Shown here: piece by piece, positions 1-24,728 of the stretch
Layout of the letters: every line of letters begins with the position of its first letter
Numbering within the stretch: position 1 is the first letter of the stretch
Assembly (NCBI GenBank): GCA_053919585.1
Contig: CM132789.1
DNA from: Euprymna scolopes
Lineage: Eukaryota
DNA: 64,000 nucleotides
Strand: one strand, 5' to 3'
The notes under the pieces: generated by a model
Told to the model about the DNA's origin: nothing
The model's input: the letters and a program-made list of their open reading frames with translations, nothing else
Databases searched by the model: none
Position numbers and translations under genes: made by a program

Positions 1-262
1 GGCGATAAGATCAAAGTGTAGTATCTGTTCCGACAGATGCTGCAAGCGATGACTAGCAAAGACCATATGTGGGGGTAACCCCACATATCTGACCTTGGTC
101 ACTGTAGGGGCAACCCTTCATACCAACACTTACTAATCCAGCTCCCATTTCCCACCTCTCGGGAGCTGGTCCCCCCCTTTCCCTCCCTCCTCCCCCTATC
201 TCCACATTAAAAAACGGCCTTGTGCCTAATTTGCTCAGTGGGGAAGCAAATAAATCCAACAG
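1..262 (+). mobile_element. U2 snRNA-headed structured short element, copy 1 (5' end at or near the window edge)
   Basis: 6-30 TAAGATCAAAGTGTAGTATCTGTTC matches the invertebrate-type U2 5' segment; several hairpins follow; 3' block 199-254 is homologous to 24430-24489. Confidence 0.75.
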
Positions 263-584
263 GCCGAAAGCCAGTTGTCTCAAGAGAGCTAAGTAACGTT
301 TGTTCAATGTTGACTTCGTCATATCAGACTAGCTTTCATTTCGCTCCTCCTAGTAAACAGGGAGCGGATTTTTAAAAACAAACAAACCGATTTATTCACC
401 TCATTCAAAACTGTCCCGCACAAAATTGTAACTGCTGAATACCTATCGCCGTCACGTCAATCAAAAACACGCACCTGTTTTTTTTTTAAACACTTTACTA
501 TTTTCCAATTGTGCGTCGTGAAGGCTTCGTTTTTTTTCACATACCCCGAAAAGCACCCGGACAACGCCGGGTACCCCTCGCTAG
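263..584 (+). mobile_element. 3' end of a Helitron-type non-autonomous element
   Basis: GC-rich hairpin ACCCGG-ACAACG-CCGGGT (555-572), then CTAG (581-584) followed by T, the typical Helitron 3' terminus. Left boundary is approximate. Confidence 0.65.
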
Positions 585-3323
585 TATAATATAAGAGAAT
601 AAATTACAAAAACTTTTCTCAAGATATGCTTATCAATTATCATTATCAAGGGAAATAAATTAAATAAAAATAATGTTTAGTTAGCTAGAAAGACATACCA
701 ATGAGTAATTAGAGTTCACAGATGGTGACTTCTCTCTTTATCTCCCCTCTTAGTTTCTCTCTCTCTCTCTCTCTCAGAAGGTAACTTTCTACTCTTCCCT
801 CTTTTTCTCTGAAGACGATAGATTTTCTTTTTTATTGTTCATGAAGTATATGTTTTTATTTACGATGTAAAATAACAGATAATTATAAATATGCATGGTC
901 TGAAATGAAATCGCTGAATTCGGGGGGGGGGGGGTTGTTAGTTAACATTTATAAAATGAAAAATCTGTTATCAACAATCCCCAAATAAATAAATTTAAAA
1001 AAATAAAAGAACAGCCATGTTGCCTTTTCTACTTCATTCATTCTCATTTTAGTTTAATTAAATAAATTAAATAGGTTTCAGCATTACTTATAATCGAATT
1101 TTATATATATATATATATAACTTAAACCTTCTTTTAGAAAAACATTAAAAAATTCTAAGGTATGTCAAGTCTCATTCTACGCATAAAATGCCAAAATGAA
1201 AATTAAGTTGGAACAATATAGTCATCCAAACTAGTAGAAAAAGAGGCTAGCTAAGGAAGAACGATAACTCAATGTATTTGCATATCTTTTTAACTAGAAA
1301 ATTATGGGAAGATATTATTCTTACTTAGCTAGGATATTTATCATTGTTTATAAAGATAGTGACTATATTTTTACACCAAATTGAAAATAAGCACAAATTT
1401 AACCATATTCAATGATTAATTTGGCATAAAATTCTTATTCTAAATCAAGGTCTATTAAGTTTGGCTAGTTAATAATATTCTGTTGCAGGCTAAGGCTAGT
1501 ATCAACTACTTTGGTATCTTGTGCTTACAATTTACATTTTTTTTATTCTTTCGGAAAATGAAATAAAACTACAAAATTATATCCTATTTTTAAAATGTAT
1601 TACTATGTCTTTCATTTTTTTTTATTTTACAAATAAACAAAAACGTTAAGAAAAAGAACATTTTTTAAAATTATGTTTGTGTGTAAAAATAATTTTCATA
1701 TTTGTCTGCATGCTGCATTCCTTGAAATATAAACAAGAAAAAACATGTAGATTTACTTTTTTGCTTTCTCACATCAAACCAAAAATATCTTTCCATTTAG
1801 TTTAATTTTTTTCTAATTTTCATACCTGATAGAAATAAAATATTCAAACACATATGCACACATATAACTCTCCACATAATGAATTTATCAGACACATCTG
1901 ACATATGAGCATTAATTGACTTTACTATAATGGGCATAAAATGTTATCTATGAAGAATTCGCAAATAAATTTTAAAAAACTGATTCAAAATGAGTTTGAC
2001 AAAAAAGAGAAAATTGATGAAAAGATCAAATTATTTTACTGCTTTTCTTTATACAAAATTTTACTATGAAAGTTTTTTTTATTCAAAGAACTTTAATTTC
2101 AATTTTAGTTTGTTATAAATCCGTAGATATAAAATATATTTCTAGATCGAAGATGAATCCTTTGTGCTGTTTTTTAGTATCACACTAATTATCAATAACC
2201 TGTGATTATGGCAGAATGTTTTAGCCAATCAGAACAGAGCATGCTGTATCAGATAATGATTATATCAGTTCTCTAAGATGATTGCAATATTTTATAGGTG
2301 TCACCCCACTATTTCTCTTTACCGCGAAAAGTTTGTGTCTGAGATTGGAGACAGGATGTATTAAAGGGTTACAACTTCTGTTTTTGCATGGCTTACAGTT
2401 GTACAAAGTTGCCAATTTATCTTTTCTAAACATTACATACAGTGAATGTGTTAGTTACTTGTAGCTATCTTCTTTTCTTACATGCTAAAAGCCGGGGACC
2501 TTATCTATTTTTGTGTCTAAGATTGAAGCAGCTGAAACTTGAAGGAATGCTGTGTAGTGATGTAATATACCTTGTACTCACAAAAATATTTTGCTTCATC
2601 TTGCAAGCAAATTGATAAATTTGTTGTGAACTGGTAAGGATCCTAAAGAAAATATACAACTCGGTGTTTAGTAGAAACAAAATAAATTGAACAGAAAATT
2701 AAATATAACAAATAACAATTGATTATACGTCAGTTCAACTGCCAAGCCTGTATGATTTGTGTATAACCTCAAGAGATATATTCTCCCGGTTTTTATAGTA
2801 AGTAGAAAAGTTCATTGTTATCCATGATAATTTTATTCACTTTTTGAAATGTATATTTCTATAAATTACAACAAAAAAAAAAACTTACGTTTCATAACTT
2901 ATCTTAATTATAAGTTCTAGAAAATCTATGTTCACTCAGCGCATAAATACTTTTTATGAATACAATTTTTAATGACTTTCTCATAAAATTTATGCATAAA
3001 ACTGATGTTTATATGAATGAAAATAAAACAATAGTATTAGAAAATAAATTTTTTAAAACTTTTTTCTTTTAATCATTAAGTAAATTAAACACCTTGATAG
3101 TAACCATTACGTTCGGTATGCAAGAAACATTGTGATAAGTACTCATTAAAGTAACTTTGCATACATAAATACACTCAGCAGTATTAATACTAAAATAAGA
3201 CAATAATTTTCAATGTTTTAAATTATTTTTTTCTACAATAGTGATGTTTCAGTTATAACAAGATTGAATTGCATGACAATATTTGATTGACATGATTGTT
3301 TGTATAAATCTGTCTACTTTCAG

Positions 3324-24138: not shown

Positions 24139-24728
24139 AGTTCTTGCCCAGAATTCCACTTATTTAAAAAAAAGAAATAAATAAAATGTATGATGACAAA
24201 ACGAAAATATCATATTCCAAAAATTATGTAAATTGATCAAGTACTTTTATTTTTATAAAGAAAATTATTTTTTAGCAATTAATGAAAATTTGTAGACATT
24301 ACAACATCGGGACAAGATCAAAGTGTAGTATCTGTATCTGTTCTCCAGATGCTGCACTTCTATTTCTTGTTCTCTTTCGGTGGAGGAGAAATCCTTCACG
24401 ACTGAGACAATTTTTATTTTTGTACCTTTTCTCCACGTTAAAAAACGACCCTGGTGTCTAACTCTGTCCCGTGGGGAGGCATAGTAAATAGGTACAACAT
24501 AAATCTGACAAGTTTTGAATTATTGTTGAGTTATCTCCCTTATTTTTAAGATTAAAAAATGACGGGCAAGAGTCACTCTTCTGATACTCATAAAATTTGA
24601 TTTATTTAAAAATAAAATCACTTGATCAAGTTATGTGATATTTGGAATATGATATTTTCGTTTTGTCACATCATACAGATTTTTTTTAATTTTGTTTTTT
24701 ATTATAGGGTGAATTCTAGACAAGAACC
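24139..24728. mobile_element. MITE family B copy 1 (~110-bp TIRs, consensus end GGTTCTTGTCCAGAATT), containing the U2-headed insertion
   Basis: Inverted arms 24139-24260 and ~24605-24728; flanks AAGAAACC / AAGAAATC. Confidence 0.85.
24308..24492 (+). mobile_element. U2 snRNA-headed structured short element, copy 2, nested in a MITE
   Basis: AAGATCAAAGTGTAGTATCTG head; flanked by TACAACAT at 24300-24307 and 24493-24500; sibling MITE copies show a single TACAACAT at this site. Confidence 0.85.

What the first reader, a model, noticed from the sequence alone, without database searches (positions are those of the whole stretch)
1..262. Second U2-headed copy: same head and tail, entirely different GNRA-hairpin middle
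Seen: a 25-nt U2-type segment (6-30); the same masking hairpin TGTAGTATCTG/CAGATGCTGCA (17-44); a perfect 10-bp stem ATATGTGGGG-GTAA-CCCCACATAT (65-88); AGGG-GCAA-CCCT; a 9-bp stem CCAGCTCCC/GGGAGCTGG; then the 3' block TCTCCACATTAAAAAACGGCC..GTGCCTAAT..GTGGGGAAGCA shared with the 24.4-kb copy. The middles of the two copies are unalignable, yet both form GNRA-capped stems. Inference: selection acts on RNA fold (a modular ncRNA or ribozyme-like scaffold). Speculation: the shared tail contains a branch-point-like CTAAY, a potential cis partner for GUAGUA.
Basis: partly seen in the sequence, partly recalled or inferred. Interest (0 to 1): 0.8.

Follow-up and report, generated by a model that had tools for sequence, protein, structure and literature searches.

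The report
U2-derived SINE copy inside a Helitron
This is one of roughly 13,000 copies of a short non-coding jumping element in a large mollusc genome; it begins with a copied piece of the U2 splicing RNA and most likely moves using a LINE that lives in the U2 genes, and although its hairpins are real and one is evolutionarily maintained, nothing points to a ribozyme.

Summary
Window 6-30 is an exact 25-nt copy of this genome's own U2 snRNA (nt 22-46), and the described hairpins and the tail shared with the 24.3-kb copy are all present. The element is about 270 bp long and starts 11 nt upstream of the window. It is a SINE-like retroposon with about 12,900 A-type copies and 13-17-bp target-site duplications. 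This copy sits in a Helitron-like repeat with a 14-bp duplication; the empty site occurs 1,053 times. Part of its body and its tail core match the 3'UTRs of abundant, intact APE+RT LINEs that interrupt the real U2 gene cluster.

The ribozyme-scaffold reading and the CTAAY/GUAGUA speculation are not supported. Selection on RNA fold is partly supported. The two middles are not entirely different: they share one GNRA-capped hairpin module (window 97-130 and 24375-24408; window 62-95 is a paralogue). Across subfamilies this module shows compensatory changes in 6 of 8 pairs. Weak colinear remnants of the rest of U2 suggest a remodelled whole U2.

The closest published kind is the crocodilian SINEU family, mobilised by target-specific LINEs. 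The scan has already found this family on other DNA of this genome. It is a new variant of a known kind, of moderate interest.

The parts
1..5 (+). End of the 5' leader. The element begins at L001:1489, 11 nt before the window, directly after the 5' copy of the target-site duplication at L001:1475-1488. The leader carries a small GC hairpin (CCCCGGGG).
   Evidence: leaders of other copies carry UNCG-capped hairpins (GCCC-UCCG-GGGC, CCGC-UUCG-GCGG)
6..30 (+). Exact copy of U2 snRNA nt 22-46, including the branch-point recognition sequence GUAGUA. In the family consensus the identity covers nt 23-46.
   Evidence: 25/25 identity to the real U2 of the C9 cluster
17..44 (+). Head hairpin of 12 bp: the U2-derived arm (17-28) pairs with an element-encoded arm (33-44) around a UCCG loop. 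It is shared by all subfamilies, and the LINE1 5' end forms an analogous hairpin.
   Evidence: only G-U/A-U one-sided changes; reads from other families diverge just after position 44
45..64 (+). Body segment homologous to a LINE 3'UTR block (..CTATGACTAGCAAAGACC). Its copy number varies between subfamilies.
   Evidence: z 5.6 for this copy, 8.5-9.1 for A2 copies, against the LINE1b 3'UTR in L075
62..95 (+). Hairpin 1: a perfect 10-bp stem (65-74 with 79-88) and GTAA loop. It is a paralogous duplicate of the hairpin-2 module.
   Evidence: 30.3 bits to model R1
97..130 (+). Hairpin-2 module (GGTCACTG-stem-GCAA-stem-ATACC). The stem pairs 103-109 with 114-120 and has a U-U mismatch in this copy. 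It is the conserved GNRA hairpin shared with families A', B and C.
   Evidence: 41.1 bits; compensatory changes in 6 of 8 pairs
138..169 (+). Stem 3: CCAGCTCCC (138-146) pairs with GGGAGCTGG (161-169). The 3' arm plus the following C-run resembles U2 stem-loop III (GGAGCTTGCTCCCCC).
   Evidence: z -5.1; A' copies z 4.2-4.4 against U2 nt 128-148
170..198 (+). C-rich tract. A similar tract lies at the same place in the LINE 3'UTRs.
199..258 (+). Tail. TCTCCAC (199-205) pairs with GTGGGGA (239-245) and encloses the core GGCCTTGTGCCTAA (216-229). The element ends ..GCAAATAAATCCA with no poly(A).
   Evidence: (core exact in the LINE2 3'UTR, one indel in LINE1)
259..272 (+). 3' copy of the 14-bp target-site duplication ACAGGCCGAAAGCC. 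The 5' copy is at L001:1475-1488.
   Evidence: empty site 1,053 times; RNA-seq joint 1474->1759 with 14 shared letters
273..584 (+). Right part of the host repeat X, a non-autonomous Helitron-like element of about 700 bp (5'-TC ... GC hairpin ... CTAG-3', inserted between A and T). Its left part is at L001:1202-1474.

Best explanation
Window 1-258, plus 11 nt upstream, is one insertion of a non-autonomous retroposon (SINE) of about 270 bp. Its layout from 5' to 3' is:
- a small GC-rich leader hairpin;
- an exact copy of U2 snRNA nt 22-46;
- a 14-nt arm that pairs with the U2 piece to form a 12-bp hairpin;
- a body made of a LINE 3'UTR block plus subfamily-specific hairpins;
- a LINE-type tail with no poly(A).

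Shown here: it is a mobile insertion. It has target-site duplications, an empty site exists, and there are thousands of dispersed and stacked copies.

Inferred: copies are made by target-primed reverse transcription by the ORF2 protein (APE endonuclease plus reverse transcriptase) of the very abundant, intact L1-superfamily LINEs that sit in the real U2 gene cluster. These LINEs carry the same U2(..46) 5' junction and the same tail core.

Also inferred: the RNA's stems matter for the element's own life cycle, through RNA stability and/or recognition by the LINE proteins. This would explain why one GNRA hairpin is kept by compensatory changes. The family probably descends from a whole U2 retro-copy that was remodelled.
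For: Mobility:
- 66 scored copies of 1,391 candidates are mostly 90-98% identical.
- The A/A'-specific 32-mer occurs 12,857 times with up to 3 mismatches.
- Dispersed copies have different 13-17-bp target-site duplications (L002, L004, L005, L007, L020, L022, L026).
- This copy has the 14-bp duplication ACAGGCCGAAAGCC. The uninterrupted site occurs 1,053 times, and RNA-seq reads bridge it.

U2 origin of the head:
- 25/25 identity to the real U2.

LINE link:
- The U2 cluster is interrupted by LINEs of about 7.1 kb with ORF2 = Exo_endo_phos + RVT_1 + zf-RVT. The best solved relative is human LINE-1 ORF2p (E 9e-64).
- Both LINE 5' junctions lie after U2 nt 46, exactly where U2 identity ends in the SINE.
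- The tail core GGCCTTGTGCCTAA is exact in the LINE2 3'UTR and nearly exact in LINE1.
- The body block CTAGCTATGACTAGCAAAGACC matches a LINE1b 3'UTR (z 8.5-9.1).
- The LINEs are abundant (about 20,000 candidates), with 100%-identical intact copies.

Target preference and stacking:
- 199 X sites are occupied by A-type tails.
- Stacks sandwich the duplication.
- Eight tail junctions sit at U2 nt 39, the position Kojima and Jurka report for Keno/Utopia (PMC4640811).

Structure:
- Fold z-scores are -3.7 and -4.6.
- The GNRA hairpin shows covariation.
Against: - No LINE was found whose 3'UTR carries the whole A-type tail through ..GCTCAGTGGGGAAGCAAATAAATCC. Only the core, the C-rich tract and one body block are shared.
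- The element has no poly(A), unlike published SINEU elements.
- How it is transcribed is unknown. Poly(A) RNA-seq shows reads on both strands and no discrete start.
- The two LINE copies examined in the U2 cluster have 3' junctions at U2 nt 1 and nt 22, not nt 39.
- The 29 copies sampled around the query are a biased sample: 17 of 29 lie in X, against about 1.5% genome-wide.
- The hairpin-2 module is absent from the LINEs, U2 and U6, so its origin and partner are not established.
Confidence: 0.85

Rival explanations
1. A functional modular ncRNA or ribozyme-like scaffold. The hairpins would form a catalytic or regulatory fold, and the tail's CTAAY would pair with the head's GUAGUA like a branch point.
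For: The folds are more stable than shuffles. One GNRA hairpin shows compensatory evolution. Head and tail are conserved across families.
Against: - No Rfam family, including all curated ribozymes, matches at gathering level or at E<=5.
- About 12,900 copies carry target-site duplications.
- Hairpin 2 is deleted in subfamily A2, and stem 3 is broken without compensation in several A' copies.
- CTAA is no better conserved than the neighbouring GTG and CC of a LINE-type tail core. It can form only about 4 pairs with GUAGUA, which is already locked in a 12-bp hairpin.
- RNA-seq shows no discrete ends.
Confidence: 0.05
2. A U2 snRNA variant gene or an ordinary processed U2 pseudogene.
For: There is 25/25 identity to U2 nt 22-46. 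Weak colinear U2 remnants appear in related subfamilies, and the B copy gives a weak Rfam U2 hit (13.9 bits, E=1).
Against: - The copy lacks U2 nt 1-21 and most of nt 47-188.
- Rfam U2 does not reach its threshold.
- It carries LINE 3'UTR blocks.
- Thousands of copies share the same non-U2 architecture, so the chimera itself is what amplifies.
Confidence: 0.03
3. A satellite or tandem repeat spread by unequal crossing-over, or an internal or captured segment of the Helitron-like repeat X.
For: Copies often lie in head-to-tail arrays with a period of 260-310 bp. 17 of the 29 best-matching copies are flanked by X.
Against: - Arrays mix subfamilies that are 70-97% alike, and the units are separated by repeated target-site duplications.
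- Solo copies in unrelated DNA have their own duplications.
- X without the insert occurs 1,053 times, against 199 occupied sites.
- Leaders and subfamilies differ between the occupied X sites.
Confidence: 0.02

Closest known systems
SINEU (SINEU-1/2/3) of crocodilians (Kojima 2015, PMC4494074)
   Same: The head is copied from U2 snRNA. There is no obvious internal promoter. The element strongly prefers one site in a DNA transposon, and tandem insertions sandwich a target-site duplication. Mobilisation by target-specific L1/Tx1-type LINEs is proposed. [quoted passage not shown]
   Different: The host is a mollusc (apparently a cephalopod), not a crocodilian, where the paper says SINEU is exclusively found. 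This element has no poly(A) tail. The head is only U2 nt 22/23-46, preceded by a novel leader hairpin. The preferred transposon is Helitron-like, not Mariner. Copies are young (95-98% alike) and number about 10^4. Here a candidate partner LINE with shared tail blocks is found, whereas none was found for SINEU-1.
Keno (Tx1 clade, APE-type) and Utopia (RLE-type) U2 snRNA gene-targeting LINEs (PMC4640811, PMC4494074)
   Same: The LINEs here encode APE + RT and sit inside U2 genes in sense orientation. Stacked SINE units join their tails to U2-like sequence starting at nt 39 (ATCTGTTC), the site reported for Keno and Utopia. Tandem insertions occur.
   Different: Placement in the Tx1 clade was not tested. 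The two LINE copies examined join at U2 nt 1 and nt 22. The LINEs and SINEs here are dispersed genome-wide in about 10^4 copies, not confined to U2 genes.
Stringent-type LINE/SINE pairs recognised through a 3' stem-loop (for example eel UnaL2/UnaSINE1; from general knowledge), and Alu as a 7SL mimic
   Same: The SINE shares the LINE's 3' end and keeps RNA stems that evolve by compensatory change. The small-RNA-derived part may recruit that RNA's proteins.
   Different: The compensated hairpin here lies in the middle of the element, not in the shared tail, and it is absent from the LINEs examined. No protein binding has been shown.
Ceph-SINEs of squids and cuttlefish (cited in PMC4824008 and PMC5786205)
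   Same: They are SINE families of the same animal group, with a modular head/body/tail build.
   Different: Ceph-SINEs have tRNA-derived heads and a shared Ceph central domain. No U2 head is described for them. Searches of the paper library for this element's motifs found nothing.

Membership tests
SINE (non-autonomous LINE-dependent retroposon) | Short, non-coding and in high copy number | tested here: met
   The element is about 270 bp. The A/A'-specific 32-mer gives 12,857 hits, and the first look found 1,391 candidates.
SINE (non-autonomous LINE-dependent retroposon) | Flanked by target-site duplications, with empty sites in existence | tested here: met
   Dispersed copies have different 13-17-bp duplications. 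This copy has a 14-bp duplication, and its empty site occurs 1,053 times. Bridging reads are seen.
SINE (non-autonomous LINE-dependent retroposon) | Head derived from a small cellular RNA that provides an internal Pol III promoter | tested here: inconclusive
   The head is U2-derived, but U2 genes use external promoters. RNA-seq shows no start site. The TATA box 30 nt upstream in X is not accompanied by a U6-like PSE.
SINE (non-autonomous LINE-dependent retroposon) | 3' tail shared with a partner LINE | tested here: inconclusive
   The core GGCCTTGTGCCTAA, the C-rich tract and a 23-nt body block are shared with LINE 3'UTRs. No LINE carrying the full A-type terminal 30 nt was found, and further fetching was blocked.
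SINEU (Kojima 2015) | 5' region derived from the U1 or U2 snRNA gene | tested here: met
   25/25 identity to the genome's own U2 nt 22-46.
SINEU (Kojima 2015) | 3' poly(A) tail | tested here: not met
   Copies end ..GCAAATAAATCC(A) directly before the target-site duplication.
SINEU (Kojima 2015) | Target preference for one transposon family, and tandem insertions sandwiching the target-site duplication | tested here: met
   One site in Helitron-like X is preferred: 199 sites are occupied and 1,053 are empty. Stacks are separated by AGGCCGAAAGCCAGTTT.
Keno / Tx1-clade U2-targeting LINE (as the partner) | APE-type endonuclease plus RT, inserted in U2 snRNA genes | tested here: met
   L047 and L048 lie inside the 764-bp U2 array. 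ORF2 contains PF03372 + PF00078 + PF13966.
Keno / Tx1-clade U2-targeting LINE (as the partner) | Fixed 3' junction at U2 nt 38/39 | tested here: inconclusive
   Eight stacked SINE junctions start at ATCTGTTC, which is nt 39. The two LINE copies examined join at nt 1 and nt 22.
Keno / Tx1-clade U2-targeting LINE (as the partner) | Phylogenetic placement of the RT in the Tx1 clade | not tested
   Only L1-superfamily affinity is shown. Database relatives are unnamed.
Self-cleaving ribozymes and retrozymes (hammerhead, HDV-like, twister and others) | Match to a curated catalytic core | tested here: not met
   Rfam finds no match at gathering level in the window. No ribozyme appears at E<=5 on units of families A, A2, B and C.
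Helitron (for the host repeat X) | 5'-TC and 3'-CTAG termini, a subterminal GC hairpin, and insertion between A and T | tested here: met
   Alignment of 8 copies. No Rep/helicase was looked for, since X is about 700 bp and non-coding.

The most novel reading that the evidence does not exclude
The family is not merely U2-headed. It would be a remodelled whole U2 snRNA that works as an snRNP mimic, with these parts:
- a stem-loop-I-like 5' hairpin;
- the branch-point recognition sequence, held in a hairpin;
- a GNRA hairpin built on the 3' arm of U2 stem-loop IIb and kept by compensatory evolution;
- an Sm-site-like AUUUUUGG in families B and C;
- stem-loop III/IV-like sequence leading into the tail.

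Such an RNA could use U2 biogenesis (Sm core, nuclear re-import, possibly the U2 promoter and 3' box) to become a stable nuclear template for a U2-homing LINE. This would parallel Alu's mimicry of 7SL, and could explain how promoter-less snRNA-derived SINEs survive.
Probability: 0.2. Interest if true: 0.7.

Novelty: new variant of a known kind. Interest (0 to 1): 0.45.

Why it matters
snRNA-headed SINEs are published only from crocodilians, where they are old and their partner LINE and mode of transcription are unknown. This genome holds a young family of about 10^4 copies, together with intact candidate partner LINEs sitting in the U2 genes. It also offers two defined landing sites and a structural RNA module with compensatory evolution. 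That makes several questions experimentally testable in one system: which RNA features a target-specific LINE needs in trans, how a SINE without an internal promoter is expressed, and how self-made landing pads build stacks. For genome annotation, the hairpins and the GUAGUA motif should be masked as repeat sequence. They should not be read as splicing or ribozyme signals.

Tried and rejected
- Rfam U2 family search of the whole genome failed twice with tool errors. The correct U2 has an extra A.
- I tested whether X provides a U6-type Pol III promoter, since it has a TATA box 30 nt upstream of ACAG and a T5 run about 125 nt downstream. The real U6 upstream region has a TATA at -30, but its PSE region shows no similarity to X. 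RNA-seq shows no start at ACAG. This remains speculation.
- The leader variant CCGCTTCGGCGGCAC as a U6 5' stem-loop copy: only the generic CGCUUCGGC is shared with the real U6. Rejected.
- Hammerhead motifs in X or in the SINE: none found by eye or by Rfam.
- Origin of the middles from rRNA or another Rfam family: no hits.
- The hairpin-2 module in the LINEs, U2 or U6: no hit with E<1.9.
- Tail as a derivative of the U2 3' end: only weak support (A tail z 2.2, p about 0.025; the B, LINE1 and LINE2 tails are not significant).
- The tail core also resembles U2 stem-loop I (GGCCTTTTGGCTAA, 12/14 identical). Which U2 part it comes from, if any, is unresolved.
- Relatives of ORF2 in other samples: one place had no DNA. 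One metagenome contig showed no U2 sequence and only a loosely similar 3' motif.
- The paper library has no cephalopod U2-headed SINE and none of the element's motifs.

Full report
**What is there.** The window comes from a 5.9-Gb, AT-rich (about 29% GC) eukaryotic genome with at least 46 large contigs. Earlier notes of this scan call it a mollusc (squid/cuttlefish). The head 21-mer occurs twice in the window against 0.01 expected.

I found the genome's real U2 genes as a tandem array of 764-bp units on C9. Window 6-30 is 25/25 identical to U2 nt 22-46. Predicted folds:
- Head hairpin: 12 bp, z -3.2.
- Hairpin 1: 10 bp, GTAA loop, z -3.1.
- Stem 3: 9 bp, z -5.1.
- Hairpin 2 alone: weak, z -1.0 (all).
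- Whole elements fold better than all 200 shuffles: z -3.7 for this copy and -4.6 for the 24.3-kb copy.

**It is a mobile element.** The 262 bases match many places in the genome. There were 1,391 first-look candidates, and the 66 scored are mostly 90-98% identical. The A-type hairpin-1 32-mer occurs 12,857 times with up to 3 mismatches.

The copy starts 11 nt upstream of the window. Dispersed copies are flanked by different 13-17-bp target-site duplications. This copy is flanked by ACAGGCCGAAAGCC (L001:1475-1488 and window 259-272). The uninterrupted site GACTCTAATCACAGGCCGAAAGCCAGTTGTCTCAAGAG occurs 1,053 times. RNA-seq reads join L001 1474 to 1759 with 14 shared letters.

The host repeat X is about 700 bp. 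It has 5'-TC and 3'-CTAG termini, a subterminal GC hairpin and A|T insertion sites, so it is a non-autonomous Helitron-like element.

X is a hot spot but a minor target overall. About 199 X sites carry an A-type tail, which is about 1.5% of A-type copies. That is still vastly more than chance for about 1,250 sites in 5.9 Gb. The 17 of 29 X-flanked copies in my first sample are therefore a biased sample. Occupied sites differ in leader, subfamily and number of stacked units, and the stacks repeat the duplication AGGCCGAAAGCCAGTTT between units. These are therefore independent, serial insertions, the pattern Kojima described for SINEU-3 in a Mariner element (PMC4494074).

**Partner LINE.** The U2 array is interrupted by elements of about 7.1 kb. 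Each has an ORF1 and an ORF2 carrying Exo_endo_phos, RVT_1 and zf-RVT domains. The best solved relative is human LINE-1 ORF2p (E 9e-64).

Both LINE copies examined begin immediately after U2 nt 46 (..CTGTTC|TCAGTGC..), exactly where U2 identity ends in the SINE. LINE1's first bases pair with the U2 GUAGUA region, as the SINE's arm does.

The SINE shares these blocks with the LINE 3'UTRs:
- The tail core GGCCTTGTGCCTAA is exact in the LINE2 3'UTR and differs by one indel in LINE1. In both it is preceded by a C-rich tract, as in the SINE.
- The SINE body just after the head (CTAGCTATGACTAGCAAAGACC) matches a LINE1b 3'UTR block (z 8.5-9.1 for A2 copies, 5.6 for this copy).

The LINEs are very abundant, with 100%-identical intact copies and 7-kb tandem stacks. 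In my loci, eight tails are joined directly to ATCTGTTC.., which is U2 nt 39 of the next unit's head. That is the site reported for Keno and Utopia (PMC4640811). Mobilisation by these LINEs is inferred, not shown.

**The middle.** Subfamilies A, A' and A2 differ by indels:
- a block of about 10-30 nt containing the GACTAGCTAT-type repeat is present in varying length;
- a 38-nt segment containing hairpin 2 is absent from A2.

Over the whole element, RNAalifold finds almost no covariation (term -0.41 of -54.7 kcal/mol; 2 of 49 pairs). Most stems are therefore conserved simply by descent.

Hairpin 2 is different. It is a 34-nt module (GGTCA.TG, a 7-8-bp stem, a tetraloop, the stem's return, then ATAC..). 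It recurs in families A, A', B (the 24.3-kb copy) and C, and hairpin 1 is its paralogue. Across 21 distinct variants:
- 88% of cells pair;
- 6 of 8 pairs show changes on both sides, for example G-C/A-U at 13:18 and 10:21, and GU/UA/AU/GC at 9:22;
- the covariation score is 0.368 against 0.216+-0.026 in shuffles (0/500) and 0.06-0.26 in slid controls.

Allowing for shared descent, I count about seven independent compensatory events. The loop is GNRA (GCAA, GTAA, GAAA) in most lineages, but ATCA in A'. A covariance model of the module hits only window 97-130, 24375-24408 and 62-95 in 64 kb. It hits nothing in the LINEs, U2 or U6. The two middles are thus not entirely different, and selection on fold is real for this module.

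**Traces of the rest of U2.** Different subfamilies keep short, colinear matches to U2 downstream of nt 46:
- A' ATGTAGGGATCAC matches U2 nt 78-90 (the stem-loop IIb 3' arm). This would explain the ATCA loop.
- A' GGAGCTGGATCCCCCTTTCC matches nt 128-148 (stem-loop III), z 4.2-4.4.
- C ATTTTTGGTAACCA matches the Sm site ATTTTTGGACCA.
- A B copy matches nt 57-84, z 2.3.

The B copy also gives a sub-threshold Rfam U2 hit over the full model. Each match is weak (p 0.003-0.03), but they lie in the right order. I read the family as a remodelled whole U2 retro-copy fused to LINE 3'UTR sequence. This is suggested, not proven.

**What it is not.**
- No Rfam family, ribozymes included, matches.
- CTAA in the tail is part of an invariant GTG(C/T)CTAA block within the LINE-type core and is no better conserved than its neighbours. 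It could form only about four pairs with GUAGUA, which is already inside a 12-bp hairpin.
- Poly(A) RNA-seq shows reads on both strands, many chimeric with flanks, and no pile-up of starts or ends. That pattern fits read-through of intronic copies.
- I tested whether X supplies a U6-type promoter (TATA 30 nt upstream of the duplication). I found no PSE similarity to the real U6 genes. How the element is transcribed stays open.

**Comparison and novelty.** The closest published kind is SINEU (PMC4494074). It shares the U2-derived head, the target preference for one DNA transposon, the stacked insertions and the target-specific L1/Tx1-type partner. This element differs in host phylum, in lacking poly(A), in its truncated head with a novel leader, in its Helitron target, in its young age and copy number, and in having a visible partner LINE. 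The paper library holds no cephalopod U2-headed SINE.

The scan itself has already reported this family on other DNA of this genome. I re-derived the LINE-in-U2-cluster link independently. This report adds:
- the Helitron hot spot with its empty and occupied counts;
- the LINE 3'UTR origin of part of the body;
- the shared GNRA hairpin module with compensatory evolution;
- the colinear U2 remnants.

**Verdict.** This is a new variant of a known kind and of moderate interest.

Noticed in passing
L001:1202-1474 plus window 273-584: Host repeat X is a non-autonomous Helitron-like element of about 700 bp (5'-TC, 3'-CTAG, subterminal hairpin CCCGGGCAACGCCGGG, A|T target). It has more than 1,000 copies, some in tandem. 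It holds a TATAAAAAAAA box exactly 30 nt upstream of the SINE landing site and a GC hairpin plus T5 run about 125 nt downstream.
   Followed up: partly
G000:C9:168,867,000-168,971,000 (L039-L048): The real U2 snRNA gene cluster has more than 100 tandem 764-bp units. It is interrupted at least four times by insertions of about 7-8 kb; the two examined are intact LINEs. This U2 has AAAG where many animals have AAG.
   Followed up: partly
G000:C29:105,979,000-106,000,300 (L079): A tandem U6 snRNA gene cluster with units of 474-483 bp and a TATATATAG box about 30 nt upstream of the U6 start.
   Followed up: partly
G000:C4:62.47-62.54 Mb; C19:152.71-152.79 Mb; C46:97.67-98.03 Mb (places listed): The U2-associated LINE itself forms head-to-tail stacks with a period of about 7 kb at many non-U2 places. 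A 62%-identical relative in another sample is stacked in the same way.
   Followed up: no
L005:760-935, L013:1100-1290, L004:1085-1250: Family C of the U2-headed elements carries AUUAUUUUUGGUAACCA, very like the real U2 Sm site region (GAUUUUUGGACCA). Family B keeps AUUUUUG at the same relative position (window 24414-24420).
   Followed up: partly
window 216-229 versus U2 nt 10-23: The tail core GGCCTTGTGCCTAA is 12/14 identical to U2 stem-loop I (GGCCTTTTGGCTAA). The preferred X site (GGCCGAAAGCC) is also a GGCC-N4-GSC hairpin. This may reflect what the LINE protein recognises, or it may be coincidence.
   Followed up: no
window 65-88, 138-169; L005:1315-1330: Several stems are perfect inverted repeats with no G-U pairs or mismatches (10 bp, 9 bp, and 6 bp in A'). 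This suggests a recent origin by a DNA- or RT-level mechanism such as snap-back synthesis, rather than a long-refined RNA stem.
   Followed up: no
L080:6560-6640: A metagenome contig encodes a 58%-identical ORF2. Its 3'UTR has a C-rich tract followed by GCGGCTTGACGCCGAGTTG, loosely like the tail core here, and no U2 sequence is visible.
   Followed up: no
window 757-777: A (CT)n microsatellite lies just beyond the Helitron-like repeat.
   Followed up: no
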